Shown: piece by piece, positions 2,688 through 31,300 of the stretch | Position numbering within the stretch: the first letter of the stretch is position 1 | Layout of the letters: each line of letters begins with the position of its first letter | NCBI GenBank assembly: GCA_965644295.1 | Contig: CBFFRP010000461.1 | Span: 1 to 64,000 of the forward strand | DNA: 64,000 nucleotides | Origin: Paraphysomonas bandaiensis | Lineage: Eukaryota; Protista; Chrysophyceae | Direction: 5' to 3' | The notes under the pieces: model-generated | Database searches by the model: none | The model's input: the letters and a program-made list of their open reading frames with translations, nothing else | Told to the model about the DNA's origin: nothing | Position numbers and translations under genes: made by a program

Positions 2688-2698
2688 CTACGGCATCC

Positions 2699-2716
2699 GG
2701 GGGGGGGAGAAAGGGT
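2699..2716 (+). promoter_or_regulatory. Polypurine tract of the Gypsy element
   Basis: GGGGGGGGGAGAAAGGG between the pol stop and the TG that starts the LTR. Confidence 0.85.
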
Positions 2717-9680: not shown

Positions 9681-9716
<36 letters not shown>

Positions 9717-10286
9717 TACATACATACATACATACATACATACATACATACATACATACATACATACATACATACATACATACATACATACGTACATACA
9801 TACATACATACATACATAAATACATACATACATACATACATACATACATACATACATACATACATACATACATACATACATACATACATACATACATACA
9901 TACATACATACATACATACATACATACATACATACATACATACATACATACATACATACATACATACATACATACATACATACATACATACACATACATA
10001 CATACATACATACATACATACATACATACATACATACATACATACATACATACATACATACATACATACATACATACATACATACATACATACATACATA
10101 CATACATACATACATACATACATACACATACATACATACATACATACATACACATACATACATACATACATACATACATACATACATAAATACATACATA
10201 CATACATACATACATACATACATACATACATACATACATACATACATACATACATACATACATACATACATACATACATACATACA

Positions 10287-10322
<36 letters not shown>

Positions 10323-13300
10323 GATCCCACCCCAGTTCCTATAAACCCACTTCCTATAAAACCCACTTCCTATAAAAATAATGCCCTTTTGCTATAATCC
10401 CAAAACCTATAATCCCATTTCCTATAATCCCATTTCCTATAAACTGCTCAAAACCCCACTTTTCTCTCGTCGACTGTATACCTATTCCTGTACCTCAAAC
10501 CGTTTCCTCAATTACCATGGTCAACGACTATCATGGTGGGTCCAATGTATGCTGGAGGAGTATCGCTCACATAACACTCCATCCATAGGCATAAAAAGTC
10601 ACTTGACACGGCTTGATCCTCAGCAACACTGTCGACATGGATACCAATCTCATATAGAGGGAATGGTACAGAAACATACCGTTCCCTCTATAATCTCATT
10701 GTGGATACATAGTCACAATGTTCAACAAACAATTACCATTGCTATCGTCCAAACAGAGGCGTCTATTGTACTGGCAACGACATGTGTACACTCGGAATTC
10801 TCTGAAGCAAACTGTTGATGGACGGTACAAAGTATATTGGGTATGTGAGGCTGGGGATGCGTGCACGGGCCGGGCCGTATCGACAAGAGAGTCAGAAGAC
10901 GGAGAAGACACTGACATTCGAGTGACCAAGCCCCACACAGCTGTGGTATTTGATTACGAAGAAACTGAAGCTGAAAATCTTGAGACTCCATGCCAGGTGA
11001 CGGAGATAGTCTATATCAATAGGCAAGCAAAGGCCCAGTTTCTTGCTCATTTTGCCAATGGCGTTGTCGATGCATATCGTACGATGGCCATATCATTGCA
11101 AAATCCTGAGCTTACGTCACCAGAATACGTTGCTGCTCGTGGATTTGCGCATTTTAGAACTCATGATTCTCTCACCTCACAGTCTTCAAGGGCACGAATT
11201 GCCGTTGTTGGTAGAAGTCCAATATCAGTGCACGAAATCAATATTCCACCTGATTCTCCATTGAGGAATTTGCCTTCGTCAAATGAACTCTTCTTACGTC
11301 ATGTTGGAGATTTGCGTGACAGTAAGTGTCTTATTTTCCATACCGATGCCTTTTTTGAGAGGTTGTGTGGTGCAAATATGGTGTACACCGACGGCACATT
11401 TAAAGTTATGCCAATAATTTTTGGAAACAGCGGCCAGCTCTTGACTATCCATTTCATAACTGGAGAAAGATCAATGCCGGGTTTGTATGCCATACTACCA
11501 GGAAAATCAATTGATGATTACATTTATGTTCTTCAATATATCAAGCGTACAGCTCAGACCAGAGAGATTCCAATAGCGTGGCAAAGAGCAATGGCCGATT
11601 TTGAAGATGGCCTTGTGAATGCATTTAGAAGAGAATTTCCGAATATTGATATGAGAGGATGTTATTTTCATTTTTGCAAATGTATATATAAGCATGTCAA
11701 TGAAAATCATGACTTACGACACTTATATCATAATGAGTTGTCTAATTTCAGGCTATTCGTCAGGTGCATTATGGCTCTTGCATTTCTACCCCCTCATGAA
11801 ATTGAGGAAGCTTTCAATGAATTGAAACAGGCATTTATACAATCCAATCCCCATTTGGTTGGAGTAGACTCGTTGGATATGTTTAACGGATATTTCTATC
11901 GCACGTGGCTTCGAAATGGGGATGACAGAATAAGACAATGGAATGTTCATGGAATTGTAGACCAACGCACCAATAACCACATGGAAGGCTATCACAGCCA
12001 ACTCAATAAAAGCTGTGGAATTCACTGTGTACTGTATCACCTTATTAAGCAGTTAATGAGGCAACAGGTTTCGTTTACAGGAGAGCTTGCACAACTTGAA
12101 GTTGGCGCCAGAGTGAATAGACGTAGACGAAAATGGGTAAACCTCAATTGTACAATCAAGCGCCTCATGTCCAGATACAGCGATGGTGATATCAACAGAC
12201 AACAATTCTTAAATTCAGTAAGTTACTATCTACTGGTAGTAGCTGTTCCAACAGCACATCAGAACAGAATATCCCCGGCTGTACGTGCTGCCATTAATGC
12301 TGCTGGTGTGGGTATACCTACACTAAATGCTCCAGTAGCTGAACAACAACCGCTTGCTCCACCTGCTGCAACAATTCAGGAACCGCTTGTTTCACCTGCA
12401 CATAATCCAGTTACCCCACGTGCCCCTGTTGTTACTACTGATATTCCAGTCGTAGTGATTGACATGGCAGCAGAAAATGATGACTATAACCCCTTATCGC
12501 TGCGTGAAAGGATTAAAGCATACGTCGATAATAATAGAACTGGAAATAGGTACACGTGGAATCTTTTTCTTCATGTTCCAATTCCTGAATTAACTTCTCA
12601 AATATTATCCATAATTCATATCATGACATATCACGATATTTGCAATGGTGTTTGGATATGCCAATCTGAAAATACGGGAGATATTGTGACTGACGCAGGT
12701 GGAGTTTTCAAAGACGTTACCTATCGGGTATTTACTCATCTTCGGCTGCATTATATTATTGAAGATACAGTCATCGTAAACCCAAATTTCTTTATACAGG
12801 AAGGGCGGTTCTGCTTACCAAACCCAGATTCATTTTGTCAAAATCCCATAGGAATTCGGTTCTATGAATCTTTTGGGAAGCTAATGCTTCTCTCATTTCT
12901 ACATGATGGTGCTTTTCCAACATGGCTATCTCCAATTGTAATTGCTTTTTGCTGTAAACAAGACGATTCCCATTTGCATTTGGAAAATGAAATTCTCGAG
13001 CAGCATGACATGGGGTATTTGGTACAATCATCGACCGAAGAGTTACTCGAGGTAGCGAATGGTTTGTATATTCCCACATATGGGAATGAAACCCAGGAAA
13101 TGTTGAAATCGACAATATCTAACTACTCATTGATAGGGCGCCGAAAATTATGCATGTTAGCGATCAAGCAGGGTTTCTGTGGTGGACAAGTAATCACAGA
13201 CTTAGCACTGCATGATGAGGAGGAATTCATCGACAGTGTTTACAATGTTTGTAGTGATGCTACGACGTTCGTTGAATCGTGTATTTGGGAGTTCGCTAAT

Positions 13301-16300
13301 GCTGAGCAAGCTCATGTACTGAATCTATTGAATGATGTTGTCACAAACCGACTCACGGATGACCAAATATGCAAATTGATGGTTTTCATATGCGGGAACA
13401 ACAACTATCCTGTGGAACCACACATAACCTTCGAATTCCATGGGAATGCGTTAATATTACCGAAAAGTCACACTTGCCACAACCAGTTGGATTTATCAAC
13501 AACCAGGTACGATGGAAATGTAACAGATCAGGACTACCACCAAAACCAAACGTTGAGAGATTTTTTTGGCAGTCCTCCTGTCGACCGACTGCTCAATGAC
13601 TTACTCACGTGCTTTGAAACTCGTGGTTTTGGATTTGCTTGAATATATATGACGTTGCGTTTTTACTCTAATTCGATATTATGTAATAAAATTTATACGT
13701 CTTCTTGTCGAGAATTATTTGTGGTAATAACCTAGGTGAAATCTAGCTACCCTAATACTCCGTCTTGTTGGTATATATTGCTGAACAGCAAAGCATGTGA
13801 AAGATTAACAGTCACATACATTAGTTATACGTCATCGGTGGGCCTATTGTTAATTTATTAATGAATTAGGTAATACCTATTGGGTAGCTAAATAGGTGGT
13901 GCCTATAGGTTTGTTATTAGGAACAACTATCAGATAACCGGTGTACTTGTAGGTACTACCTAATTGTAGTATCTAATTCTCACCAATAGGCAGTACCTAT
14001 AGACTCTTCAAATTACAACGACAACACAATAAAAGCGAAGTAAAGCAATCAAATCCAAATACCTCAGCAATAACTTCTACGCCAAACGAACAACATCGCT
14101 CACCCGTACCACACCAATGAAATAGAAGTACCGTGCTCACCCCAAATATCCCAAAGCCTGAACAATCATCATTTTCTTTCGACTCTTCTGTATCAGGCTT
14201 AATGGGACTTCGACCGCTATGAGCTCATGTGGATCCAGACTTTAAGCAATGTCGACCTCAGAATGCGGTCTCCAACCTGCAGGATGTTTGGGACAGTCGA
14301 AGAGGACTGATGCTTCCAGGGTCACAAGTCGGATTCTGGTAGCAGCGACGCATGTACATGAGGCGTTTGTGCGCAGCCAACAATCACCTTTTCGCCAAAA
14401 ACTTTGTCTCATGGACTGGGTATTGCGTCATCATGTGAAATGTTTTCGTTTTGTAATCTGATTTGTATTTCTCTGATTCGAGAAGAAATGAAGCACTCCT
14501 ATAATCTCCTGTGTGAAACTCGGCCCAAGTCTGTTATGAATGATGAGTCAATTGTGTTGCCAGTGCATAACAGTGGATAGACTGTGAAAGATATATAAAG
14601 CACAGCCAAGCGAGCTTTTGCTGTGTTCGTCCGACCCTCTGCATCATCCAAGCCCTGTGACAGTGTTGAATCGTGACTGTTAAAGTGTCTTCATCTCATC
14701 TATCGGGAATTGCGTTCGTCTGATTCTGTTTTCATCAAAGGAGAAAGATCAGAATGCAAAAACAGTCTCTTGACTGTCAGTGCGAGGAAACTGTCAGAAG
14801 GTAAGCTGCCATGGCTATCGTGTACAGTATTGGTGGTGCCGTATTGACCGTCATCCTTGTCAGTAGCAGGGTCTACATCTAAGTACTCTGTAAGCATGCA
14901 TGCTATCTACACTATAACCTCTGAGGAGTGTCCCAGAGTAAGTGATATGATCGAGTGGATTTATTCTATTGTTGGGTGTGTACGAGTCAGATTCACGCGA
15001 TGTGTCAACATCGTCGGCTCGTTTCTCAATCACCTCCACCACTTCCGTGTAGAATGATATGAACTGCCGTTCGAATGTACTAAATGTGTCGTCTCGAATC
15101 TGTTTGTTTCCTCTTACGCCACTCTCATAGGTCGCAATGAACTCGCCCCATAGTCTGGACAGTAACTGTCCTTCCCCGTCCACACTATAAGTAAAGTAAA
15201 TGCACAGTTAGTATTGATGCATACATACATATACAAATATAAAACAGACATATCATTGAATGCATAGAACACCAAGTAAGTACACGTACATCTTTACATA
15301 TCATACTGTATGCATATGTATACCTGAATGTGTACTCTCTACGTCAGTCTGAGAGTCCACCTGTATAACCGGCATCACATCCTCCACTCTGGGGACACTC
15401 TCACTACTAGACTGGTCCCACTCCGACTTTGGCACCTACAAGTATGAGGATACATAAGAGCGACATATAGAGAGGCGGAGGGCCGAGGGGTCGCTCTTGC
15501 CGCTTAGGCATTCTTCCTGAGCCAGAAAGGCTCTCGTATCGTAATAAAACTTCGTTTTATTACTCTTTCCTTTTCTCTTTAAATATAATAATTATCTTAT
15601 ATAATAATATTAATAATACTATACTTTAAATAAAAATTAATTACTTTATATAATATTAAATAATTATCTTATAATAAAATAAAAATATAGTTTTGGCATT
15701 TTGGCTTTCTGGCATTTTGGCTTTTATGAAAATTAGAAAAAGTTATAAAATAAAATTTATTATATAGTTTATGTTATAAAAAGCCAGTGCCAAAATGCCA
15801 GAGTTGTAATGGTGATGATGATGGTGGTGATGATGATGGTGATGATGGTGGTGTTGTAACGGTGATGATGTAAAATTTATTATATAGTTTATGTTATAAA
15901 AATCCAGTGCCATAATGCCAGTTTCTATTCAAAATATTTTTTCAAAATAATTTATCAAAAATATTTATTCTATTCAAAATATTTATTCTATTCAAAATAT
16001 TTTTTCAAAATAATTTATTCTATTCAAAATATTTTTTCAAAATAATTTATTCTATTCAAAATATTTTATTCTATTCAAAATATTTTTTCAAAATAATTTA
16101 TTCTATTCAAAATAATTTATCAAAATAATTTATCAAAATAATTTTTACGTTATTACCAATTAAAAAATTATTAAAAAGCAAAATGGTTTAAAGAGATAAT
16201 TTTAAAAAGGCCATGAAAGATGTCAAAAAGAAAAAGCAGATGAAGGTTAATAAATAGTTGAATACACACACGCAACAAACAATAAACAAAATAGTTTTAA

Positions 16301-19300
16301 AAAATTCCTTTACTGTTTTAATTTTTTTAAATTAAAACATTATATTAAATTGTTTCAATACATCAAGTTATCAATAACATTTAAAGAGTATTTCCACTTT
16401 TTTGTTTTCATTTTTTTCTCATCTCCTTCATTTTCAATAACATACATAATGGACTCCCAAAATTTATCCCATAAATATAATTTTTTGAATATATTTTCAT
16501 TTTTCCTTTCTTTTAAATTGTTTCTAGAAATATAATCTTCTAATATTTCTTTAGATGGATATGATAATGTGCGAGAGCTTATATATCTTCTACAATATTT
16601 ATTAAGTATATTATTAATTTCACCTTCTGATTTATTCAAAGGTTTTTCACAGCAATTTGATAATTTTGTATGAATAAATTTATCGTTATCTTCATCATAA
16701 TAACCGTTTAATTCACTATCAACATGTCCACAACAATCAAAATATTTAATTCCATAACCCATTATATATATATATATGTTAGATAAAAATATTACTCTGT
16801 TGTTGAATCTAAACTCCATGTATCACCTGTCAATCTAAAATTGATAGTGTTAAACATAATATAACCTGCTGAGGCAATAACAATTCTTATAATTGAATAT
16901 CTTTTAGTTGTTGTAACTGCTTCAGTGAACAAAGTTGAATCTTGTGTTCCTGGAAATGCTACATCATCAATATAATTCCAAGTTGTGCCATCATCAGAAC
17001 CTAATATATAACATGCTTTCATTGTTCTCTCTTGTGATGTGCTTCTTTCTTGAGTTGATATAGATGTTAAACGAATTTTATAAGGCAATTGAACTTGAAC
17101 CCATTCACCATCTATTGATTGAGATGTATCATATGTAGTTGAAAAATAATAATCTGTTCCATTGCTACCAATGTAATTACCTGTTGTATCATCATAAGCT
17201 TCACCAGAAGGCATAGCATGAAAAACGCCATCTCTGTAATTGTCAATACCATTTGGTCCGCTGTTATATCTGTTATTACCCCAGAACGTCTCATCACTAT
17301 CATCAAATAATAAGTTACATGAATTTAAAGGGTCAGCTGTTCTATATCGGCCGTATGAAGAACAAATTAAGTTATAATTTCCATTGGCATAAGCAGTTGA
17401 ACCACTTCCACCAGAATAAGACTTAGTTATATGAGTATCAAAAACATCTTGACCATTAAAAGCAGTTGGAAGACCTGTAAATGATGTAGGAAAAGTGACA
17501 TTTGTTTGGTATTGTGTATTTGTATTACCTTGAACGACATTATATTTGTTAATGTGATTAGCAATATTAATAATAGAACTTAATGACATATATATATTGA
17601 TGTTATAAAATAATTTGTAATTTTCACATTAAATAATTATATAGTATAAATATATATAACCATGAGTATTTACCCAAAGCCGAAACCATCAAACGGAGTA
17701 TTCAACCCTTCAAATTACACATATATAAAAGACAGCATTGTTGACGTTGACTTAACAGGATATATTCAAAAGAGTGGAGATGTAATGAGTGGAACTCTAG
17801 TTTTGCCATCATTGAATTTATATGGAGATGGACAATTATTATTCAATGACAATTCAATACAAACAACAGCAATGACAGATGCTTTAAAAACAGATATTGA
17901 AAATACGAAAACAAAAGCAACTAATCTATCATATGATGGAACGAATACGTCAATTTCAGGAAGTGTTGAAGTATCAAAAATAATATTTCCTAATTTAAGT
18001 GAACAAACATTAGCCTTTACAAATAATTTAAAAACGACATATGATAACTATGAAACAGAAAAACAAGATTTGATAACATCAGGAAATAGAATAAGTTGTA
18101 GTTTAATAGGAGATGGATTAATAACAAATGATGAACTAAACAAACTAAATAATGTTTCATCAAATATTCAAAATCAATTAGACGCCTTAGGACATGGTTT
18201 AGGAAGTATATCAAAATTATATGAATTTAACAAAGGTGAAATGATAGGTTATAATTCAACCAATATCACTAATGGTAATGTTTCAGGAATTGTTTCAGTT
18301 GGTTCTGGTGTGTTATATGCATCAAGCGTTAATATATCATATACTAGTGAATACAATGTTTTGGCGCCATATACGCCAGATGTAGATGACTTTTTTGATA
18401 GCTTCGGTTATATTAAAAAATTAGGTAGATTCTTAATCATACATCAATATGAACTTGGAACACTTGAATCTATTAACCATTTTTTTACTCATATCGAATT
18501 ACATAAGAATGGTGTTTTACATAAAAAGTCAAGAAAATCTGGACAACATTGGAAAGCTAATAGAGGTTCTATTGAATATATAACAGGTGAAATTTCTTTC
18601 TATATAACTGTAGATGAATTATCAACATATACTTTATCATTTGATTCTGATTTTGATTTTGATGGTGCAAGTAGTGATACCACTTTAAAATCAACAATAG
18701 AAATTACACAAATATAAAAAGAATGAATATATTTTTCTAAACAATGTTATATATACAGTATAAGATGGTTGATATAGTAAATTTTTATGAATTAGACGAA
18801 GTGAAAGCCTTTCAAACAGAATCTATTAATCCTAACTATGGAAAACATGGAATAAAAGTTCCTTTCAGAATTTTAAACGTTGGAGCGTCTGGAGGTGGTA
18901 AATCGAATATAGTTTTGAATATGATTCGTATCATGAATAATACGTTTCACAAGATTATCTTGTATACAAGAAACAAGAAAGAACCGTTATATGAATACTT
19001 AGAAAGTAAGTTAGAAGACAATGATGACTTATTTGAAATTCATGAAGGACTAGAGCATTTAAGAAGTGTTAACATTGATAAAGAATATTTCGGACAAACG
19101 CTAATTATATTTGATGACTTAGTTAATGAGAAGAATCAAGATATAATAGGTGAAATGTTCTTAAGAGGTCGTAAAATTGGTGTTTCATTAATGTATTTGA
19201 CTCAGAAATATGCAAAAGTTCCAACACTAGTTAGAGAGCAATTAAATTATTTAATAATGAAGAAGATAAGTGGAAAAAGAGATATAACTTATTTAATGAG

Positions 19301-22300
19301 AAATCATGCTTTAAATGGAAGTATTGAGCAATTATTAAACATGTATCAGTATTGTATAGATGACAACATAACGAACTTTTTATTAATTGATTTAGAAGCA
19401 CCAAGTGAAAGAGCATTCAGAAAGAACTTCAATGAAATATTAAATATAGAAGCATTTTAATTATAAAAAAATATGTTGTTATTATATATAAAAAGATGTT
19501 ATCAAGTTTTGAAATAAGAAGATTGAGTCCAAAGGAAAGAGCAAAATATTTTAGACAAAAGGAACTAAACGACTTAAAAATATTATCAGAAATTAGTAAG
19601 AATATATCAGAAGAGCAACAACACTTAAAAGAAGGTATCACACCAGAAGTAAGAGATAATAGAACACTAGCAGAAAAAGAAGAAGATAAAGTATTACAAT
19701 CACAGACAGCACAAAAGAACGCTTTGAAGTTGTTTAAAAATGACGGCAAAGAGGCACAAGAGTTTTTAAATAAATTAAAGAATAGTAGATATAAAAACTT
19801 TGTTGACTTTAACAAATATTTTTTAGGTATGTTTTCTTCTTTGTCCAATAAGGTTGGTAAAATAAGAGCAAACGAAATGTATGACTTTGTATATAGATAT
19901 CTTGAAAATCAAAAGAACACATCAGGAATAAGAAATCTTTTATCATCAGAACAAGAAGTTGATGCAATAATACGACATTTAACTAGTATAGCGGGTATAT
20001 CAAACGAAACTAAAAATGATTTAAATGATAGACTTGAAGCATTGCAACTAACTTTAGAATCATTGATTAAGAAGTATGGAGAAAGCAAAGTGAAACAAGC
20101 TTATGAAATGTCAGATTTACCTGATTTTGATGAAGAAGTTGATGAAGACACAATTGTTCCAGAAATACAAAAGATAGACAAAAAATCATTAGAAAGTTTC
20201 GCAAGACAATTTCAAAATTACCCAGTTTCTGATGATTACTCACTTTATGATGATTACTCAGTTTCTGATTATCACGATGATTCAATATCATCAATAACAA
20301 ATCAAGATGAAGATTTTCATATTTATAGCAACACTGATTATGACTTTGACTTTGACGAAGAGAAAGAAGAGAAAGAAGAGACTGAGATGAAAGAAGTAAA
20401 AGAAGTATATGATGAAAAGACTCAACGAGCTATAAATAAAGTAAATTCCATGACATTAGAAGAAATGAAGGCAATGTCAGCTAATGTGGTAAGATTGATT
20501 AGAATATTGAATCAAGGAGGAGACGAATATAAAGATAGTTCAACACGAGTTAATAAAGATGACTTGAAATCTTATAATGAAGTTGCACCACTCTTTACAC
20601 CAAAAGGCGGAAAAGCTACAGGAATACAAAAGAAGAGTTTATATAATTTTGTCAAAGACTCAGGAATCAAAACAATAGATAGATTATTAAGAGAAAGAAT
20701 AGCAGAACAAGAAGGAAATATAGCAGAAGCAAAACAACCAAGAGAACCGAGAAAATCAATTACACGAACTATACACGATATAAGAAGAGAAGAAGAAGAA
20801 ATGAAAAGAAAAGATGACGATGAAGATGAAGTAGAAGAAGAACCACAAGAAGACATTATAAAAGATGGCAACGGATTAAATATTAAAAAGGTTGGAAGTA
20901 TGAGAGTTAGATTTGGTTAATATTTAATAGTATAAAATATAATATAATATAATAGTATATTATATAATAATGACAATTAAAAAGAACTACAAGAAGTTTT
21001 ACAAACTACAAATAAATGTAATGAAGCTATTAGACAATAAGTTAATGATATTATATGAGACAGGGTCACCATTCAGCAGATATATAAAGACACGAACAAT
21101 AAGCCCAGAGTTTGCGAGTGTGTTGTTAAACTTAATAGACACAAATGAACTAAACTATGAAATGATAAAACGATTAACAGAAGAAGAGAAGAAATTATTT
21201 AACATCATAATGACACAATCAGGAGCAAAGACAGAATTGAAATACAAAGAGCCAGAACTAACGGAAGAAGATTTATTAAAGCGATTTTTAATTTTACAAG
21301 GGAGTATTCGATCAGGAAACAACAGTAATGAAGTATTGAAAGAAGGAATAGACATATTGAAAAGACTTAATAAGATAGGTAGAATAGATGATGAACAGTT
21401 AAATGAAATCTTAAATAGTTTAGAATAACTATTTACAAAAATTATTATATAAGTAAATATTATATAATGTCAGACACAAATTATAACTACAATACTATTA
21501 TATTGAATAAAAACAATATAGTTTCAGGTTCAAAGAATTCAGTATTCAAATATACTTTTAATCAATCATTACGACTAAATGATTGTTCATTAGCTATTCA
21601 AAGCATAAATATGTATTACAGTTGGTTTAATATATCAGATTATTTCAGAAACAATAAATTTTCATATGTATGGTTTGACAATGCAGGAGACTTGAACACA
21701 ACTATAGATATTACAATTCCAGATGGATTTTATACAGTTGAATTATTGAATAAATTTTTACAATCTGAACTAGAGAAAAGGGGTCATTACTTAATTCAAC
21801 AAAGCACGGGTGATTTTGCTTATCACATAGAATTTATTTCAAATGTAAGTTATTATTCAGTTCAATTGAATGTATATGCAATGATGACAGCAGCACAAGC
21901 CGGAACAGATTTCGTCAAAGGTTCAGAGACTTGGTCTTATCCTTCAACACCAACAACACCTCAACTAGTTGTTTCAAATTCTTCTTCATTTGGAGACTTA
22001 ATAGGATATTCTAATGGTTCGTATCCATCAACAGCATCAAGCACAAACACAACTTTTTTATCTGATAAAACCCCAAATATGACGCCTGTTAGCTCTATAA
22101 ACGTCGTTTGTTCAATGACTACTCAAAACGGCTTTAGCAATCCTGATGGACTGTTATATTCATTTACAAGTGGTAGTGTTGAATTTGGAGGTATGATAGA
22201 TAGAGAACCAAAAACAGAGTCATTTGTTAAAGTGAGAGATGCTTTATATTCAAGTTTTACAATAGAATTATACGACCAAGATATGAGAAGATTAGATATA

Positions 22301-25300
22301 AGAGACGCTGAAACGGTTATAATGTTAATTATTAAGAGTCCTACTAATGAAGATTAAAACGATATAGTATATTTTTTTATATAATACTATTATATACGAT
22401 ATGTCATATTATAAAATGATAGGTGGAACAATGAGAAGACAAGTAATTCCTTCTCATAGAAAAGAAATACAAGAAGAAACAAAAGAAGATAAGATAAAAG
22501 AAGACGTAATTATTGAACATAAACAGAAAGTGGAAAACACAAAGAAACCTAATATAAGTTTAAGTGATAAACTAATGAGTATTAAGGTGAAACCAAGAAC
22601 AGAAGGGAAAGGACAAGATAGAAGCAAAGATGAGTTATTTGAGCGTGTAAACAATGTATCAATGGAAAGATTAAAAAAATTTGCTAATTTAAAAGTATAG
22701 AATATTTTATTCTATTCAAAATATTTTTTCAAAATATTTTATTCTATTCAAAATTATTTATTATAAAATATTTTATAATCTAAGTATATATTATACAATA
22801 TGGACAAGGCAATAGTTGACCAATCTTTTGAACAAGCACAGGAGAATGTAAGTGACTTTGTGGAGTGGGATTATAGCAAAGTAAGTGATTTGCAGACTTC
22901 AGGTAATTATTCCAGCAATCAAACAATATTTGAAACTACCACACTCTCTAACAACGGTAAAATAACTGATTACAAAAATGGATTCTTTACTATTCCAATA
23001 GTGGATGTTGTGACTGGTGAAAACGGTGGTAATCCCGTTGACTTTACAGCAGCACACATAAAAGAGAGTGATTTGTTACTATGTAGGAAAAATTCAAGTT
23101 TAAATATGATAGATTCAGTATCTATTCAATATCAAAATCAAGCAGGAATTCAAGAGACAAGAAATATTAATCAATACTTAATATTTAAACAACATTCAGA
23201 AATGTCATTAGATGATGAATATGTTAATGGTCCGACAATAGGATATGCTAAAGACACATCGGATTCATGGAGCTATGATGAAGCGAACGGATTAATGAAT
23301 AATAATAACGCTATGAATCATTTAAATGGTATTGATTACATCAATAAATGTAATAAAGGAATGTATGAAAGACAACAAGTTTTTAATAAAGTTGTTGATA
23401 CACTCAATGAATCTAAAAGAAATTTGGTATTGGGTAATAATGAAAAAATTAAAGAAATGAATCGCGGCTATGTTGTGAACACTGCAACTTATAAAGCCTA
23501 TTATCATAATGCTATTATTCGTCTTAAAGACCTTTCAAGTATATTTGAGAAATCTCCTCCCATGAAAGGTGGTCTTTTCAAAATAACAGTAAATTTTAAC
23601 CAGTGTATATTCAAAGTGACTAAAACAGATAACGACACAATGTCATTTTCTCCAGCAGATTTTAACGGGAGAGGGACTAATCCTTTGATGGTGTGTAGTT
23701 CTGGATATCAAACTTTATTTGGCGGTGCGAATAACTCAGCAATTTCAGACGATGTATACTGTGGTGGATACACAATTCCAGATGGAACAGTACTAACAAT
23801 TTCCAGCAATATAGCAAAGCCTCAATTTTACCCACACAATACACTTAACGTCATGCCATGTAAAGAACAGAACTGTTTTCTTCACATTCCTTCTTATATA
23901 ATGAAACCTGCTCTACAGAAAAGATATTTAGAGAGTCCACAAAAACAAGTTATATATAATGATGTTGTTTTGTTCCAGCTTTTCAATAAATCAAACCAAG
24001 TCAATGAACTGATAACAAATGGCCTATCGCATGTAAAGAGGATGATAATTTGTCCGTTTATTAGCTCAGGGGCTAATGGAACAAATCAGATTCACCCGTT
24101 TCAATCTCCTTTCACGTGTGAACCTGGAACGTGTAGTCCGTATGTCATTAATAATTTTCAAGTTAAAGTATCATCAACTAATTTATATCCTAATCAAATC
24201 AATTATTCATATGATATGTTTATGAGAGAGTTAAATGGTAAATATGGAGTAAATTTTAACTTAACAACTGGTTTATGTAGTTCAAGAATCAATTTAAAAG
24301 ACTTCATTAACACATACGGTTATATCGTAGTTGACCTAAAACGTAAACACACTGACGACGAAAGCGTCCCCTTATCTATTCAGTTGGAATGTAACATAAC
24401 AAGTCCCAAACCACTTGATTTTAATATTTTCATTGAACAAGAGAAATCATTCGGAATTGAAGTAGCAACAGGAAAAAGAGTAGATTAAACAAAATATTTT
24501 TAGTATGATAATATTTAATATAAACTAATTATTATCTCAACATAATATATATATAATGCATCAAGTAAAACTCAATCTATCTGAAGCTCAATTAAGAAAG
24601 TTATCAAACGGACACAATATACAAGTTAGACCAGACCAAATCGGCTTTGGCTTTCCAGTTGCTTTATCTGACAAGAACTTGAAAAAAATTGAAAACTCTT
24701 ATAATAAGTCAAAAGGAATGCGACTAACATTAGACAATGATGAAATTGAAGGTGGAAATCTAAAACAAAACATTAGAAGTGCTTTCAATAAGACTAAGAA
24801 ACAAGTTAAAAAGACATTAAAAGACCCAAACTTAGGAAGAAAGGTTAAAAATACTTCAAGAAAGGTTAAAAATACTGTCAATGATTTTGCTGTTGTTGGT
24901 GATTTAGGCATTCCCGTTGTTAGTGATTCATATAATTTATTGAATACTACTACCCGTTTAGGTGATAAGTTAGTTAGAAGTGGTGTGGACCATATTGAAG
25001 ATAGAAAAGATGAAAAGAAAAGAAGTCAATTTGTTAATGATTTTAATTCACTAAGAGAACATGCTAATACTCAATCTTCAAATTCTCCTCCAACTGAAGG
25101 AAGTGGTAATCCTTATCTTCCATCAAAGCAAGTGAAGAAAGTTAAAAAAAAACTTACTACTGGCTCATCATTTAGAACATTGGGTGCTGGAGTTATAGAA
25201 GTGGATTACAAAGGAAAGAAACCCGTTAAACTTAAAGACGATGGAAGTAATCTAGTTAGAGCTGGACATCCTGGTTTTGACCCTGGAATATCAACTTTGC

Positions 25301-28300
25301 CTAATACTTGTTGTTATTGTTCTCATTGTGGAAAGAAAAAATAATGTGAATATAATATATAATGGATTACACAACAAGTAACATAGATTTGACACATTAT
25401 CTTATGTTAAAAGGTATAAATCTTAATCAAATAGTGAGTAAGAATAAATTATTAGGTAAAGCTAAGAACAATGGAAACTATATAATAAACTTAGAAGATA
25501 GTGATAAAGGTACGGGTTCTCATTGGGTAGCTTTGAAGTGTTTTAAAAAAACTTGTGTATATTTTGATTCATATGGAATTGCACCTCCTAGAGAAGTTAT
25601 AAGTTTTTGTAATAAGAAGAAGTTAATATATTCATGTGACCAAATACAAGGCATAAAAGACACTTCCTGTGGTTTTTATTGTGTTTACTTTCTTTATCAT
25701 TTCAATAATCTAAGAAGTTTTAAAGATGATATAAGAAGTTTAGGTTATCATTTAAACTTATTTCTTAAACCTTTTGATACAAGTAACACAGAAAAGAATG
25801 TGAAGATACTAAAAAGAAGATTCAAAGAAATCTATGAAAATGACTTGAAGAAATAATTTTAATTTGTGTTAAAGAATTATACAATTTTTTAAATCTGCAA
25901 TTTATATATATATAGATGAAAAAATTGACTACTCCCAGTAAACCAACAGACGCGATGCCTGAAACATATAAATCAATTGTTGAAGTTGAATCTAATTCAA
26001 ATCCTTTTGATTCATTTAAGGCTCCTCCTGTTATTCAAAAGCAAGAATCAATGCGTGAATTGCCTCCAAAAACACTTTACAATCACAATCTTAAGCGGCT
26101 TAAATCATACAGAAACTTAAGAAAGAAATATAAACTAGATAATCAAAAAACTGTGTTTTTAGAAAACTTGAAAGAAACTTTAAAGCCTCTCGATCCAAGA
26201 AGCAATAAATATGATAGTGAATTATTAGTGGCTGTCTTAGATATTGCTGAATATTTTTTTATATATGGTGATAAAGAACAAAGGAACACTATGAAAATGG
26301 AAGCTGTTGTTGAAATAATGAAACCATATTTTAACAATGATGAAACATATTTATTACATAGTATCAATAATGTAATGCATAAAGTTAAAAGAAGTAACAT
26401 ATTCAGAAGATTAGCAACAAGACTTAGAATTTTTTTTTCAATGACGATGAAAGCTTCTTAAAGGCTCTCATTAAATCGTTGATTGTTGAGATTCTAGTTA
26501 AAGTTATTATTCAAAGAATATTCCCAATTTTATTAATCGCATTATAAAACTATTTCATTTTATTATATATGTGTAATATATATAGTATTGATATGTCAAA
26601 ATGGATACAACACGTAAAAGATTACAGTGAACAAAATAATATGAAGTATAATGAAGCCTTATCAGACCCTGTGTGCAGAGCATTATATTATGAAATGAAA
26701 GGTGGTGCTTTAACAGCAGATGAAACAAGAAAATTATTAAAGTCTTCATATAATAAAAAAAACAAAGATGTAGGTAATTTTAAAGTTGATAAGCATTTAT
26801 CTGGAAATAGAACAAAAGTTTATTATGATGAAGAAAATAATATGCCCGTTGTTGTTCATCGTGGAACAAACTCTAAAAAAGATGTATTAACTGATGCAGG
26901 CTTATTATTTGGACATAGAGGAAATAGATTTAAACATGCTAAAAAAATACAAAAGAAAGCAGAAAAGAAATATGGAACTGAAAACATGCACACATTAGGG
27001 CATTCTTTAGGTGGACTCGTTGCAGAAGAAATAGGCAAGAATTCAAAAAATGTAATCACATATAACAAAGCTATATCACCTTTTGAAATGTTAAAAAAAA
27101 ATCAATCAAATCAAACAGACATTAAAACAAGCAATGACCCTGTATCATCATTAAATTATTTTAATAATAATAAAAAAAATAAAACTAAAGTATTTAATGC
27201 TAAAACAAATAACCCTTTTAAATCACATAGTACAGACGCTTTGAAATATTTAAAACCTGACAAAGTTATTGGAGAATAAATTTAAAAATTACGTCATTTA
27301 TAAGATGTTTGTTTGGAATACTTTTTAATTTCTTCTCTAGTCATTATGTGATTGTTTTCATTTTTAATTTTAAGTATGCTTTGAGGTAAATATTTGAAAA
27401 CTTCTTTTTCATACCAACAAATAGGTTTAGTAAATTCAAGATGTGTTATTGTGTTAGGAATATTTTTAATAATTTTATTTAGTTTTCTCATAGATACTTC
27501 TGTATGTATCATATATTCATCACTCTTTCGAACGTTCATGTCAAAAGGTCTTGTTAATATATAATACATTTTTGAATCTTTAAATACAATACATCTTATT
27601 TCTTTATCATTTTGTAGCTTTGAATATAAACTGTCAATTTCTTCAATATTAATTTCTTCAATGTCAATTGTTAAAGTTTTCATAATATATATATATTATA
27701 AATATAAAATTAGTTTTTTAAATTGTTTTATAATAAAATTATTATTTTTATTAAATTTGAAAACTATATTTTTTATATAAACATTATTATATATACTTTA
27801 TGGCAGATTTTGTTATATGTTTAAAAAATGAACTCTTCGCAATACCAAAGACAAAGAAACCTCAAGTTCAAACTGAAATATCAAACATAGTAAAACAAAT
27901 TGAAGGATATAAAGCCTTAATCAAAGATTTAGAAATACAGAAACGAAAAAAACAAGTTGAACTTCTCAGTGAAAGACAACAAATATATTATAAGAATCCT
28001 ATTAATAGAAACTTACCAAGTGAACAACTTGAAAAAACTAAAGCTTATGAGAAAAGACAAAAGCTATTAAAAGAATATGATGATTCACACGGTTCTTATA
28101 TTAAACCTGAACAAGGCTATTAATTTTTGAAACGTTACATATACATATGTATATATAATACTAACTAACTATAATGACAACAAAATTTATAAATTATACA
28201 TCTTCTTATATTTCTCCATATTAATAATCATTGACTTCATCTCTTCAATCTCTTTATAACATTTCTTATGATATTCTCTTGAATTCCAATCATTGTTTAT

Positions 28301-31300
28301 TCTTTTTATAGTTTTATCACAATGTTTACACTTTCTTTTAATTTCTCTAGGCATGATATATAATATATATATATAATATTTTTTAAATTGTTTTATATAT
28401 TTTTGAAAAATTATTTTGAATAGAATAAATATTTTTGATAAATTATTTTGAAAAAATATTTTGAATAGAATAAATATTTTTGATAAATTATTTTGAAAAA
28501 ATATTTTGAATAGAATAAATATTTTTAATAATATGAACCTATATTTGATATTACTTTCGTTGGTGATGTTCCTGAGTTAGTATATATTATTGTTATTGTT
28601 TGCAATATTAATCCTGATGCTGTCACGTTACTGATATCCACATTTGCGAGTCCTCCTGACACATTCAACGTTTCTGAAACTGTATTAACTTTTAAAGTGT
28701 TTATATATGCCTTATATGTTGAAGTGTCTATTAAAACAGAAACTGTAAAACTTGTATTTGTTAAGTTACTTGAATTAATATTCGTTATATCAAGTTCAAA
28801 ATTTGTATCACTTGTTAAACCATTGAAATATATAATTGAACCATTGCTATAATTATATGTCAACACATTTGAAGAAAACGTATATGTTGTGCTGATGGAT
28901 TCGCTTATTTGTTTAGTTGTTATATTTCCTGTCATTGTTCCGCCTGTTAAATTCAATTTTGTATTTTCAAGTGTTGTAATATTGCCGTCTATTGTACTTA
29001 GCAAGTTATCAATTGTATCAGTAAATGTGGAGTCATAAACTAAAGAAGAATCAAGTTTATTATTTACATCTATTAAATCATGTTTGTCACTTTGTAAGTT
29101 TGTTATATCTGTGTCATTGCTTGTTATTTGAGCATTCAAACTAGAAATAATATTATCTATTGTGTTTAATTCTGTTGAATCATACACTAATGAAGAATCC
29201 AACTTATTATTTACATCTATTAAATCGTGTTTGTCACTTTGTAAGTTTGTTATGTCTGTATCATTACCTGTTATTTGAGTCTTCAAACTAGAAATAATAT
29301 TATCCATTGTGTTTAATTCTGTTGAGTCATATACTAATGAAGAATCTAACCTGTTATTTACGTCTATTAAATCATGTTTATCACTTTGTAAGTTTGTTAT
29401 ATCTGTATCATTACTTGTTATTTGACCTTGTAAATTTACTATTATATTATCTATTGTATTTAATTCTGTTGAGTCATATACTAATGAAGAATCCAACTTA
29501 TTATTTACATCTATTAAATCATGTTTGTCACTTTGTAAGTTTGTTATATCTGTATCATTACTTGCTATTTGAGCATTCAAACTAGAAATAATATTATCAA
29601 CCGTGTCAGTAAATGTAGAGTCATAAACCAATGATGAATTAAGTTTATTATTCATATCGATTAAATTATGTTTAGTATCAATATTGTTCTGTAATGCTAT
29701 ATCTTGGGCTTGTAAATTTGCCACATCCGTTTGTAAATTCGGTATATTAATTAAGTCTATATCTTGGAGAGCATCAAGACCGTTAAAACTTGCTGTCAAT
29801 GTATCTAATTGTGATTGTATAGTTTCATTGGTATTTATACCGTCTAATGTTTGTATTTCATTTTCAGTCAGGTTTAATAATCTTGTATTCATATCTGACA
29901 ACATATTATTTTTTGAATCTGTGAAAGCAACTGTTTGGGGTTCATTGTTTATGGTTAAGTTATTACCATTCAAGATTTCAACGTTCGCTGTAAATTTAGC
30001 ATTGTCCAATCTTGCATATTCCGCCATATTTAATATTACTCTTGCTGTTTCAATCTGTTTATGATTTTCTGCATTGAAAATGGCATTATTGCTTGTTTTC
30101 GGCTTCGTATAAATTGACATCTATATATATAATATAACAACATTATTATATTCTATAATTAAATTAGACTTCAAGGTTTTATAGGGTTTTTGTATAAATT
30201 TGTTTTCTTTTCTAATTATATATACAATGTTAATCGATGTAATTATTAAGTATAAAAAAAAAAGTGGCCCACTCTGTTTAGAACTCTTTGAATCATTAGA
30301 CCATTCTAAATTTACCGCTCGTAGTGTACAATTCTTTAAAGAAATAGACCATTCTAAATTTAACGCTCGTAGTTCTAACCCTAATTTGTTTTGGCATGAT
30401 TATACAATAAATATTAAAGACTTTGAAGAATTTGTCATGCATTTTGAAGATGTAATTGATGTAATTCATGTAAGAATAATATAATAAAACTGAGGGTTTT
30501 TTAAACAAAATTGGGGGTTTTATTTCTAAAATTAAGGGTTTTTATATAAATCAAGGTTTTTATATAAAAATTGGGGGTTTTTATTTCTAAAATTAAGGGT
30601 TTTTATATAAATCAAGGTTTTTATATAAAAATTGGGATTTTGTCGTTTTGTTTTATAGCAAAATGGCTGCTATGAGAGTTCCAAACCATTGTTGTAAAGG
30701 AATTCCCCCAAAAATGGTTTGGAACCCTCATACGTGTTAATGTGGTCCAAGCCTAGCATTAACAGTATTTGAATTCCATTTTTTTTCAGAAAAACGCTTT
30801 CTATGTGGCGGCATAGGGTTTCGAACCAGGCTGAACAGAACTGCCGCCACAGATTCTACCCAGTAGGCCGAAAACCACGTATTTCCTAACCATCACAACA
30901 TGATTTAAATATATAAATGTAATATTTTTAGTCTGTATATTTTCTGTATTTTTGTGTTGTTGTTGTGATGCTGTTGTGTTGTTGTTGTGATGCTGTTGTG
31001 TTGTTTGTGTGTCTACGAGTATATATATACATTATATATATATTCATTCATAATATTCATTGTCATTGTGTCTATATCATTGTGATATATAACAAGCATG
31101 GAAATAAAGGAAATATGATGTCATTATGAGTGCATATCAGGTATATTGTCTTTGTTTGGTTATATGTGTCGTATTCATTATATTCATTGTTGTTGTTATG
31201 TGGGGTTCTTCTTCTTTCTCACAAGCATTTGTGAAAACCCCAAAGGCTTCATTTCTTTCTTTCTTCTAACATCTTTTTCTCTTCTTGTGTTCTCTTGCAT

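What the first reader, a model, noticed from the sequence alone, without database searches (positions are those of the whole stretch)
10718..13642. Mutator transposase fused in frame to an apparently catalytic HECT ubiquitin ligase
Seen: one uninterrupted ORF with FLYWCH-like finger, MULE DDE core, Pro/Ala linker (about 12240-12480), then HECT N-lobe (DAGGV, FGKLM) and C-lobe with the catalytic Cys in LPKSHTCHNQLDL (13467-13478) and a GFGFA end. It lies inside TIRs, so it is not obviously domesticated. Known: MULEs are reported to carry Ulp1-type proteases; I am not aware of a described transposase-HECT fusion but cannot verify that here. Inference: a transposon that brings its own ubiquitin ligase to its binding sites, e.g. 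to remove silencing or chromatin factors or to limit its own level.
Basis: partly seen in the sequence, partly recalled or inferred. Interest (0 to 1): 0.9.

Follow-up and report, generated by a model that had tools for sequence, protein, structure and literature searches.

The report
Mutator transposase carrying a HECT ligase
A jumping gene in an unidentified marine eukaryote encodes one protein joining a cut-and-paste (Mutator) transposase to a HECT ubiquitin-ligase domain that looks catalytically intact; the fusion recurs in two very distant relatives, and I found no description of it in the literature I could search.

Summary
Window 10718-13642 (+) is one uninterrupted 974-codon ORF. It has a FLYWCH finger, a MULE DDE core, a Pro/Ala linker and a HECT domain, each above Pfam's curated cut-off. 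The DDE triad, the catalytic Cys (C920) and the -4 Phe (F971) are all present.

The fusion is not a one-off. An exhaustive protein search found a 1010-aa protein with the same architecture at about 28% identity. A third contig has MULE then HECT, separated by one in-frame stop and one frameshift. A profile of the three HECT modules hits only HECT E3 ligases in the PDB, with the Cys aligned.

The TIR statement needs correcting. No inverted repeat flanks the ORF closely. The left array of a 15-bp unit (10332-10443) has its inverted partner at 37336-37397. In between lies a nested 21.7-kb virophage/polinton-like virus (about 15470-37179).

Eighty more distant MULE loci lack HECT, and some relatives carry OTU instead. 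Papers I could search describe Ulp1, OTU and C19 proteases in transposases, but no HECT.

Structure prediction failed because the alignment had only three sequences. Copy number, mobility and ligase activity are untested. Verdict: a real, conserved, apparently undescribed variant of the known link between transposases and ubiquitin-pathway enzymes.

The parts
10314..10322 (.). Candidate 9-bp target-site duplication ATATATATA, left copy
   Evidence: Read from the sequence. The same 9-mer directly follows the proposed right end. It is low complexity and lies inside a compound (ACAT)n(AT)n microsatellite, so it is compatible with a MULE-type 9-bp TSD but not diagnostic.
10323..10443 (+). Left end of the proposed outer (Mutator-type) element: 5 direct copies of a 15-16-bp unit (CCCACTTCCTATAAA and variants)
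   Evidence: Family D1. The 14-mer search gave 5 matches on the + strand here. blastn to the inverted partner gave E=2e-13.
10718..13642 (+). Single-exon ORF, 974 aa: FLYWCH - MULE DDE transposase - Pro/Ala linker - HECT
   Evidence: Base composition is host-like: GC3 is 0.367, against 0.389 for host ORFs and 0.225 for the viral ORFs.
10745..10936 (+). FLYWCH zinc finger (aa 10-73), the presumed DNA-binding module
   Evidence: Pfam PF04500, 26.0 bits, GA 23.6. Close relatives also have it.
11387..11986 (+). MULE catalytic core: Pfam MULE aa 224-321, with D225, D294 and E423 (DDE) and C315/H318
   Evidence: D225, D294, E423, C315 and H318 are invariant in the 6-member transposase alignment A3.
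12230..12517 (+). Low-complexity Pro/Ala/Val linker (aa ~505-600)
   Evidence: It is not conserved in P0003, whose linker is acidic.
12680..13639 (+). HECT domain (aa ~655-974): N-lobe motifs DAGGV and FGK..L.H.GAFPTWL, C-lobe LPKSHTC, end GFGFA
   Evidence: Pfam PF00632, aa 694-927, profile positions 20-281 of 306, 33-37 bits, GA 23.9. Motifs are invariant in A2. The A2 profile hits only HECT E3s in the PDB.
13475..13477 (+). Codon of the predicted catalytic cysteine C920
   Evidence: Invariant HTC in A2. It aligns to the active-site Cys motif of TOM1 (LPSSHTCFNQLNL) and NEDD4 (LPRAHTCFNRLDL).
13628..13630 (+). Codon of F971, the Phe at position -4 from the C-terminus
   Evidence: All three HECT modules end with Phe at -4: GFGFA, GFTRA and GFGHI. 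The functional role of the -4 Phe is from general knowledge of HECT ligases.
13643..15469 (.). 3' internal part of the proposed outer element (GC 0.418), with minus-strand ORF pieces at 14700-15183 of unknown function
   Evidence: No Pfam match.
15470..37179 (.). Nested virophage/polinton-like virus, about 21.7 kb, about 26% GC, TIRs about 0.8 kb. It is not part of the transposon proper but splits it.
   Evidence: TIRs 15499-16305 / 36325-37150 at 93-100%, extending outward to about 15470 / 37179.
37180..37335 (.). Short remainder of the outer element between the viral insertion and the right array
   Evidence: GC 0.391, host-like or element-like.
37336..37437 (-). Right end of the proposed outer element: 4 perfect plus 2 degenerate copies of the same 15-16-bp unit, inverted relative to the left array
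37438..37446 (.). Candidate 9-bp target-site duplication ATATATATA, right copy
   Evidence: Read from the sequence. The low-complexity caveat given for the left copy applies here too.

Best explanation
The ORF is the transposase gene of a Mutator-superfamily DNA transposon of the FLYWCH-bearing kind. In one narrow lineage this transposase has acquired a C-terminal HECT-type ubiquitin-ligase domain and kept it over long evolutionary distances.

Shown:
- The fusion exists, and all three Pfam domains pass their cut-offs.
- The DDE triad, the HECT catalytic Cys and the -4 Phe are intact.
- Two relatives at only 25-37% identity share the same order of domains.
- Inverted arrays of a 15-bp unit bracket the gene.
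- A 21.7-kb virophage-like element has inserted between the gene and the right array.

Inferred mechanism: the FLYWCH finger and the DDE core bind the repeated 15-bp units at the element ends, which places the HECT domain at the transposition complex. There the HECT domain takes ubiquitin from a host E2 onto C920 and passes it to lysines of nearby proteins.

My preferred target is the transposase complex itself, or chromatin and repair proteins at the break. Ubiquitination would then help dismantle the very stable post-cleavage complex and hand the break to host repair, while also limiting transposase level. Removal of silencing factors is a second possibility.

Related transposases carry OTU or Ulp1 de-conjugating enzymes at the same kind of position. 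This suggests that the ubiquitin/SUMO state at the transposition site is what these accessory domains tune.
For: ORF and domains.

DDE and CxxH are invariant in A3.

Second full-length fusion: P0003/L001, 1010 aa, from an independent assembly with 51% GC. It aligns end to end at 28% identity and keeps SHTCHN. Its Pfam HECT score is 33.9-36.1 bits.

Third instance: L004. The MULE ORF ends at an in-frame TAG. The canonical N-lobe start motif (IDIGGVLR) follows in the same frame. After a frameshift comes a 334-aa HECT ORF scoring 42 bits over Pfam profile positions 23-280.

In the 3-member HECT alignment, HTC, FGK..L.H.G..P.WL and the C-terminal GF with Phe at -4 are invariant, at about 28% overall identity.

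The A2 profile against the PDB gave 66 matches with E up to 1, of which 60 are listed. Among those listed, all 37 with E<=0.001 are HECT E3 ligases; the best is TOM1 at 1.8e-6, with the Cys aligned. The only listed non-HECT row is a marginal one, C-terminal Bte1 at E=0.11.

The three HECT-bearing transposases fall in one 9-row subclade (SH-aLRT 88) of a 16-row clade supported at 99.

Transposon context: the inverted arrays have 9 matches against 0.86 expected, and none lies elsewhere in the window. The gene is intronless and lies between ankyrin exons. Its composition is host-like, not virus-like. A near-identical variant with 6 SNPs and the same left junction is present in two Tara Oceans assemblies.

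Precedents for ubiquitin-pathway domains in transposases: PMC2836005. I also found OTU in relative P0023, at 26.8 bits against GA 23.3. RAG1 is a DDE recombinase with a RING E3 (PMC8374863).
Against: - No biochemical or transcript evidence exists.
- The fold is not confirmed. AlphaFold gave pLDDT 36 and 41 from 3-sequence alignments.
- The window holds only one copy, and copy number in the genome is unknown.
- The terminal repeats are arrays of a short unit rather than a long clean TIR.
- The candidate TSD is microsatellite sequence.
- The right end is 24 kb from the gene because of the nested virus, so this copy may no longer move.
- Only three HECT-bearing members were found. The six other members of the subclade sit on contigs too short to tell. 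The close relative P0004/L003 has no HECT within the 1.9 kb downstream.
- The C-lobe has a roughly 20-residue insertion after RYDG that the other two lack.
- The choice of substrate is pure inference.
Confidence: 0.6

Rival explanations
1. It is a domesticated host gene: a transposase-derived DNA-binding protein fused to HECT. It would serve the host as a sequence-targeted E3 ligase and no longer move.
For: Conservation of the whole architecture at 28% identity across different organisms is also what an old host gene would show. There is one copy in the window. Each relative was seen on a single contig. No TIRs were detected on L001 or L004, although those contigs barely exceed the gene. Composition is host-like.
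Against: Inverted arrays of a 15-bp unit bracket the gene and occur nowhere else in 64 kb. The gene is intronless inside an intron of an intron-rich host gene. The DDE triad and CxxH are fully intact. The L004 copy carries a stop and a frameshift, as decaying transposon copies do. Its nearest relatives are ordinary MULE transposases.
Confidence: 0.2
2. The HECT domain is retained but not as a ligase. It would act as an E2- or ubiquitin-binding or scaffolding module, or as a decoy that titrates a host E2 or E3.
For: Similarity to canonical HECT is weak (33-42 bits). There is a C-lobe insertion. No confident fold model was obtained.
Against: The catalytic Cys, in its LPxxHTC context, and the -4 Phe are the best-conserved positions among three modules that are otherwise about 28% identical. 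Both matter for catalysis rather than for folding alone.
Confidence: 0.12
3. The fusion arose from an accidental Pack-MULE-like capture of a host HECT fragment, or from read-through into a neighbouring gene, and has no function.
For: MULEs are known to pick up host gene fragments (PMC6446971 abstract).
Against: The same fusion, in the same order and in frame, occurs in an independent full-length protein and in a third contig from other samples. Catalytic motifs are conserved while the linker is not. A neutral fragment would not keep a 320-codon open frame at 28% identity.
Confidence: 0.04
4. The fusion is an assembly chimera that joins a MULE to an unrelated HECT gene.
For: None specific. The short metagenome contigs of this element do break inside the ORF.
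Against: The frame is continuous through the junction, and composition is even across it: GC 0.418 in the N-half and 0.399 in the C-half, with GC3 0.374 and 0.385. The same architecture appears in the independent assembly L001.
Confidence: 0.02

Closest known systems
Mutator-like elements with Ulp1 or OTU protease domains (KI-MULE/VANDAL-type elements with Ulp1; MuDR-6_HM with OTU)
   Same: These are MULE transposons whose proteins include an enzyme of the ubiquitin/SUMO system (PMC2836005 discussion; PMC6446971 Table 1). My own search also found MULE relatives with OTU (P0023).
   Different: Those domains are cysteine proteases that remove ubiquitin or SUMO. Here the domain is a HECT ligase that attaches ubiquitin. 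No HECT appears among the accessory motifs listed for the 50 MULE lineages in PMC6446971.
Ginger1 transposases with C-terminal OTU or Ulp1
   Same: The layout is the same: a DDE transposase at the N-terminus and a ubiquitin-pathway enzyme at the C-terminus of one polypeptide, within an element that has TIRs (PMC2836005).
   Different: The transposase superfamily is different (integrase-like rather than MULE), and the enzyme is a de-conjugating one, not a ligase.
RAG1 (DDE recombinase derived from a Transib-type transposase, with an N-terminal RING E3 ligase)
   Same: It is the one well-studied case of a DDE cut-and-paste enzyme and a ubiquitin ligase in the same protein. The ligase activity promotes efficient recombination (PMC8374863).
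   Different: RAG1 carries a RING, an adaptor-type E3 with no thioester, at the N-terminus. It belongs to a different transposase superfamily and is a domesticated vertebrate gene. Here the ligase is a HECT, a thioester-forming E3, at the C-terminus of what looks like a transposon gene.
Phantom and other FLYWCH-bearing MULEs
   Same: An N-terminal FLYWCH zinc finger is followed by a MULE DDE core in a single ORF (PMC6446971 Table 1).
   Different: No HECT is reported for them. I did not test phylogenetic membership in the Phantom group against reference sequences.
Canonical HECT E3 ligases (TOM1/HUWE1, NEDD4, E6AP)
   Same: Shared features are the Pfam HECT match over N- and C-lobes, the LPxxHTCxNxLDL active-site motif, and the C-terminal GF with Phe at -4.
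   Different: The match is very divergent, with best PDB E=1.8e-6 and only when a profile is used. Cys920 lies 54 residues from the C-terminus, longer than usual, because of a roughly 20-residue insertion. The substrate-targeting N-terminal region is a transposase.

Membership tests
Mutator superfamily (MULE) transposase | MULE transposase domain (Pfam PF10551) at or above the curated cut-off | tested here: met
   34.1-35.1 bits against GA 27.6, aa 224-321. There were 7607 homologues at E<=0.001, and all those inspected are MULE-type.
Mutator superfamily (MULE) transposase | Intact DDE triad with the C/DxxH motif after the second Asp | tested here: met
   D225, D294, E423, C315 and H318 are invariant in A3.
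Mutator superfamily (MULE) transposase | Terminal inverted repeats | tested here: inconclusive
   Inverted arrays of a 15-bp unit lie at 10332-10443 (+) and 37336-37397 (-), with 9 matches against 0.86 expected. They are short-unit arrays rather than a long TIR, the extreme tips do not match, and a nested virus leaves them 27 kb apart.
Mutator superfamily (MULE) transposase | Target-site duplication of 8-11 bp | tested here: inconclusive
   ATATATATA occurs on both sides (10314-10322 and 37438-37446), but it is part of a microsatellite.
Mutator superfamily (MULE) transposase | Several copies or insertion polymorphism in the genome | not testable with these tools
   There is one copy in the window. 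A 0.5%-diverged variant with the same microsatellite flank occurs in two Tara assemblies, which could be an allele or a second copy. The source genome is not available.
HECT E3 ubiquitin ligase | HECT domain (Pfam PF00632) at or above the curated cut-off, covering both lobes | tested here: met
   Window: 33.1-36.6 bits, profile positions 20-281 of 306. L004: 42 bits, positions 23-280. P0003: 36.1 bits, positions 146-283. GA is 23.9.
HECT E3 ubiquitin ligase | Active-site Cys in the conserved C-lobe loop | tested here: met
   C920 in LPKSHTCHNQLDL is invariant in A2 and aligns on the TOM1 and NEDD4 active-site motif.
HECT E3 ubiquitin ligase | Phe at position -4 from the C-terminus | tested here: met
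   The C-termini are GFGFA (window), GFTRA (P0003) and GFGHI (L004).
HECT E3 ubiquitin ligase | Bilobal HECT fold | tested here: inconclusive
   AlphaFold2 with 3-sequence alignments gave mean pLDDT 36.0 and 41.1. I ran no fold search on such models.
HECT E3 ubiquitin ligase | E2-dependent ubiquitin thioester and transfer | not testable with these tools
   This needs a biochemical assay.
Pack-MULE (non-autonomous MULE carrying captured host gene fragments) | No transposase; captured fragments are not conserved as a functional unit among related elements | tested here: not met
   The transposase is present and intact. The HECT is in frame with it and conserved in P0003 and L004.
Domesticated transposase fusion gene | Loss of terminal repeats; single syntenic orthologue under purifying selection | tested here: inconclusive
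   Terminal arrays are present, which argues against this. Synteny and copy number cannot be tested.
Phantom subgroup of MULEs | FLYWCH finger plus phylogenetic grouping with Phantom reference transposases | not tested
   FLYWCH is present. No Phantom reference sequences were available by reference for a tree.

The most novel reading that the evidence does not exclude
A lineage of Mutator transposons in marine eukaryotes encodes its own active HECT ubiquitin ligase as part of the transposase. This would be the first mobile-element transposase known to carry a ubiquitin-conjugating rather than a de-conjugating enzyme. Transposition in this lineage would depend on ubiquitination carried out in cis at the transposition complex. 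In addition, the copy in this window now encloses a complete virophage-like genome between its ends, so the transposase could in principle move an endogenous virus as cargo.
Probability: 0.4. Interest if true: 0.85.

Novelty: new variant of a known kind. Interest (0 to 1): 0.72.

Why it matters
Transposases fused to enzymes that remove ubiquitin or SUMO (Ulp1, OTU, C19) have been known for about twenty years, but what those enzymes do is still unsettled (PMC2836005). A transposase with the opposite activity, a thioester-forming E3 ligase, gives a second and experimentally tractable handle on the same question: which ubiquitin-dependent step limits cut-and-paste transposition.

A single Cys-to-Ala change should separate ligase function from DNA cleavage. 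MULE transposition can already be assayed in yeast (PMC5499845).

The fusion is also a natural parallel to RAG1, where a RING E3 sits on a DDE recombinase. It would be a natural example of an E3 ligase targeted by a sequence-specific DNA-binding module. Finally, the family shows that accessory ubiquitin-pathway domains have been exchanged (OTU in some relatives, HECT here) on closely related transposase backbones.

Tried and rejected
**Searches that found little or nothing**
- A TIR pair close around the ORF: none. The CCTAT-type palindromes at 13864-13999 pair with each other only.
- Word-indexed protein searches. The full-length query found one newt MULE. The HECT half alone and the 3-member HECT profile found nothing. 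This shows how divergent the domain is and says nothing about absence.
- Exact look-up of the 974-aa protein: not on record.
- HECT-based scans of JGI metagenomes and IMG/VR: no relatives. Full-length and transposase-based scans of IMG/VR: none.
- A transposase-based metagenome scan gave 80 MULE loci, none with a HECT by HMM on six-frame translations.
- Literature searches for a HECT-transposase fusion: nothing relevant.
- Rfam scan of the window: no hits.

**Tests that were inconclusive**
- Contigs of subclade members P0005, P0014, P0021 and P0152 are too short to reach a HECT.
- AlphaFold was run twice, on A2 and A4, with pLDDT 36 and 41. Both models are unusable, so I ran no Foldseek search.
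- I tested whether Tara scaffold L002 is an internally deleted copy. Its 47-bp tail matches nothing in the window. Its frameshift is a T6/T7 homopolymer difference that L094 does not share, so I do not count it as proof of a decayed copy.
- A clean TSD for the nested virus: ambiguous.
- The identity of the host organism could not be established with the collections on hand.

**Idea rejected**
- That the ORF is cargo of the viral element. Its composition is host-like, and it lies outside the viral TIRs.

Full report
**1. The observation**

Window 10718-13642 (+) is a single open reading frame of 974 codons. It opens only eight codons upstream of its ATG.

Pfam finds three domains, each above its curated cut-off:
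- FLYWCH, aa 10-73, 26.0 bits against a cut-off of 23.6.
- MULE transposase, aa 224-321, 34-35 bits against 27.6.
- HECT, aa 694-927, covering profile positions 20-281 of 306, 33-37 bits against 23.9.

A Pro/Ala/Val-rich low-complexity stretch (about aa 505-600) lies between the transposase and HECT parts. The catalytic-type cysteine is C920 (nt 13475-13477) and the Phe at -4 is F971 (nt 13628-13630). A 974-codon open frame in 40% GC DNA is far beyond chance.

**2. The HECT part is a true HECT homologue**

On its own, the C-terminal half gives only a marginal PDB match, to the HECW2 C-lobe (E=0.9). The word-indexed protein database gives nothing.

Two relatives changed that (section 3). An alignment of the three HECT modules (A2) is only about 28% identical overall, yet several positions are invariant:
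- the N-lobe block FGK..L.H.G..P.WL;
- the block RL..Q..L....G....P..P;
- the active-site HTC;
- RYDG;
- the terminal GF, with Phe at -4 in all three (GFGFA, GFTRA, GFGHI).

A profile of A2 searched against all PDB sequences matched 66 distinct chains at E up to 1, of which 60 are listed. Among those listed, all 37 with E<=0.001 are HECT E3 ligases such as TOM1, NEDD4, SMURF2, E6AP, RSP5 and HUWE1. The best is TOM1 at E=1.8e-6. The one listed non-HECT chain is a marginal match, C-terminal Bte1 at E=0.11. The family's SHTC aligns on the active-site Cys motif of TOM1 and NEDD4.

The window protein has a roughly 20-residue insertion after RYDG that the other two lack.

The fold could not be confirmed. 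AlphaFold2 on 3-sequence alignments gave mean pLDDT 36.0 and 41.1, so I did not run fold searches on those models.

**3. The fusion recurs**

The exhaustive HMMER search with the full-length protein found 7607 proteins at E<=0.001. Almost all the listed ones match only the transposase half. Three results matter.

- **P0003** is 1010 aa, from a Logan assembly of run SRR30894616 (contig L001, 51% GC). It aligns from residue 2 to the active-site loop at 28% identity, and 37% in the transposase half. Its domain order is FLYWCH-MULE-HECT and it keeps SHTCHN.
- **P0006** lies on contig L004 (run SRR32481249, 41% GC). It is a 632-aa FLYWCH-MULE ORF that ends at an in-frame TAG. The same frame continues through a canonical HECT N-lobe start (IDIGGVLR). 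After one frameshift comes a 334-aa ORF whose Pfam HECT score is 42 bits over profile positions 23-280. I read this locus through its stops only with X, in a script. It is therefore a third, interrupted instance of the same fusion.
- **P0002** lies on L002, a Tara Oceans scaffold that is 99.5% identical to window 10275-11635 (section 5).

In the 6-member transposase alignment (A3), D225, D294, E423, C315 and H318 are invariant. The catalytic DDE triad and the MULE CxxH motif are therefore intact.

In a maximum-likelihood tree of 56 transposases, the three HECT-bearing rows fall in one 9-row subclade (SH-aLRT 88), inside a 16-row clade supported at 99. The six other rows of that subclade are short ORFs on contigs of 1.8-2.8 kb. 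I fetched contigs for P0005, P0014, P0021 and a cluster-mate of P0020, and none reaches far enough to show or exclude a HECT. The contigs of P0026 and P0035, at 2.1-2.2 kb, are likewise too short for a gene of about 3 kb.

Outside that subclade:
- P0004/L003 has no HECT within 1.9 kb downstream.
- None of 80 more distant MULE loci from JGI metagenomes has one.
- Some relatives carry an OTU domain instead. P0023 scores 26.8 bits against a cut-off of 23.3, and P0128 falls just below the cut-off.

**4.

No inverted repeat flanks the ORF closely.

The left flank carries five direct copies of a 15-16-bp unit (CCCACTTCCTATAAA and variants) at 10332-10443. The only other place in 64 kb with this unit is 37336-37397, where four perfect copies lie on the opposite strand, followed outward by two degenerate copies. 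The 14-mer with up to 2 mismatches has 9 matches against 0.86 expected, and all 9 lie in these two arrays.

Both arrays abut (ACAT)n/(AT)n microsatellite in an intron of an ankyrin-repeat gene. Ankyrin exons lie at about 8591-8690, 9490-9590 and 37600-37700.

I therefore propose an outer element from 10323 to 37437. A 9-bp ATATATATA lies on each side. This is the usual MULE TSD length (PMC6446971 Table 1), but here it is microsatellite sequence and so not diagnostic.

**5. What lies between the gene and the right array**

A separate element occupies about 15470-37179. It is 21.7 kb long and about 26% GC, against about 40% around it. Its own inverted terminal repeats are about 0.8 kb, at 15499-16305 and 36325-37150 with 93-100% identity, and they extend a little further out.

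It encodes:
- a Pox_A32-type packaging ATPase;
- a 562-aa protein and a 296-aa protein in the positions of major and minor capsid proteins (no Pfam match);
- an adenovirus-type cysteine protease;
- a GHSLGG lipase-like protein;
- a repeat-rich fibre-like protein;
- an rve integrase with a chromodomain;
- a D5-like primase-helicase.

This is the gene set of an integrated virophage or polinton-like virus, which parasitises protists and their giant viruses. I built no consensus of it and repaired nothing.

The transposase-HECT gene lies outside the viral TIRs and has host-like codon composition. GC3 is 0.367, against 0.389 for host ORFs and 0.225 for viral ORFs. It is therefore not viral cargo.

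The simplest reading is that the virus integrated into the 3' part of a 5.4-kb Mutator-type element, about 260 bp from its right end.

**6. Evidence on mobility**

The window holds one copy.

Two Tara Oceans assemblies (L002 and L094) contain the left junction and the first 0.6-0.9 kb of the ORF. They share the same six substitutions relative to the window, three of them synonymous. Each assembly breaks inside the ORF at a different point. A T6/T7 homopolymer difference that truncates the ORF in L002 is absent from L094.

This shows a second haplotype or copy in the ocean. It also shows that assemblers struggle here, as they do with repeats. It does not prove several insertion sites, because the flank is the same microsatellite.

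The organism is marine and eukaryotic, but I could not identify it. Nothing suggests human sequence. No spliced model was needed, because the ORF is a single exon.

**7. How it most likely works**

Shown: one polypeptide has a zinc-finger DNA-binding module, an intact DDE nuclease core and a HECT domain with intact catalytic signature residues. It is conserved over large distances and associated with inverted arrays of a short repeat.

Inferred:
- The transposase part binds the 15-bp units at the element ends and so positions the HECT domain at the transposition complex.
- The HECT domain is charged by a host E2 on C920 and modifies nearby lysines.

My preferred targets are the transposase complex itself and chromatin or repair factors at the break. 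Ubiquitination would promote disassembly of the stable post-cleavage complex and recruit repair, with self-limitation as a side effect.

Two published parallels make a ubiquitin-dependent step plausible:
- De-ubiquitinating and de-SUMOylating domains (OTU, Ulp1, C19) recur in MULE, Ginger, Helitron and IS5-like elements. The authors of PMC2836005 argued from this that the ubiquitin pathway is broadly involved in transposition.
- RAG1 is a DDE recombinase of transposon origin, and its RING E3 activity promotes efficient recombination (PMC8374863).

**8. Comparison with what is known, and novelty**

It meets the tested sequence features of a MULE transposase and of a HECT E3 (see the membership table). 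The tests left open are terminal repeats, TSD and copy number on the transposon side, and fold and activity on the HECT side.

It is not a Pack-MULE, because the transposase is present and the HECT is conserved in frame. Domestication is the main rival, at about 0.2.

A survey of 1631 autonomous MULEs in 50 lineages lists FAR1, OTU and SET as extra motifs but no HECT (PMC6446971). Four full-text searches found no transposase-HECT fusion. Repbase and subscription journals could not be searched, so 'undescribed' is provisional.

I rate it a new variant of a known kind: a transposase with a ubiquitin-pathway accessory enzyme, but here a conjugating enzyme rather than a de-conjugating one.

**9. 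Limits**

Its 150 visible hits are dominated by the transposase half, so the true number of HECT-bearing members is unknown.
- Structure prediction failed for lack of alignment depth.

Noticed in passing
window 15470-37179: An integrated virophage/polinton-like virus: 21.7 kb, about 26% GC, with TIRs of about 0.8 kb. It encodes a Pox_A32 packaging ATPase, capsid-position ORFs, an adenain-type protease, a lipase-like protein, an rve+chromodomain integrase and a D5-like primase-helicase. No clean TSD was found; CATATA is a candidate. The putative major capsid protein has no Pfam, PDB or IMG/VR match.
   Followed up: partly
window 21467-22354, 25362-25853, 31555-32568, 32571-34010: Exact copies of four of the viral ORFs are on record. 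Each sits in a cluster of 25-43 members at 90% identity or more. The clusters come mostly from ENA marine assemblies, and two carry Tara-named members, from 0.22-3 and 0.45-0.8 micrometre fractions. The virus, or its endogenous copies, is therefore common and polymorphic in the ocean.
   Followed up: partly
window 8591-10322 and 37438-37700: A host ankyrin-repeat gene has roughly one repeat per short exon. Its introns are filled with long (ACAT)n microsatellite. The whole 27-kb composite element sits in one such intron.
   Followed up: no
window 1-2700: A Ty3/gypsy-type retrotransposon pol (RNase H, integrase zinc finger, rve core) runs off the left edge of the window.
   Followed up: no
window 14700-15183 (-): Two adjacent minus-strand ORF pieces (65 and 107 aa) lie inside the 3' part of the outer element. 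They may be exons of a second gene or a captured fragment. The one piece scanned, the 107-aa ORF at 14860-15183, has no Pfam match.
   Followed up: partly
window 13864-13999: A cluster of mutually complementary TAGGTA(A/C)TACCTA-type motifs lies about 220 bp downstream of the ORF stop (I6-I8). Their function is unknown.
   Followed up: partly
window 38071-39219: A tandem array with a 336-bp period (170-bp sub-period), 3.4 copies at 97% identity, and strong GC skew. It produces long spurious ORFs.
   Followed up: no
L087-L090 (ENA metagenome scaffolds) and L091/L092: In close MULE relatives the FLYWCH, DDE and C-terminal parts are separate ORFs divided by 22-47-bp AT-rich gaps. In L087 the second gap contains a GT...AG stretch read by eye, which looks like a very short intron rather than decay.
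   Followed up: partly
P0023 and P0128: MULE relatives carry an OTU cysteine-protease domain at the C-terminus (P0023, above the Pfam cut-off) or the N-terminus (P0128, just below it). Ubiquitin-pathway domains have therefore been swapped on related transposase backbones.
   Followed up: partly
L094:1062-1113: After window position ~11356, the Tara contig continues with what looks, by eye, like the reverse complement of window ~11440-11493. Its tail spells the start of the minus-strand ORF 11299-11493 (MAYKPGIDLSPV...). This is either a fold-back assembly artefact or a rearranged copy.
   Followed up: no
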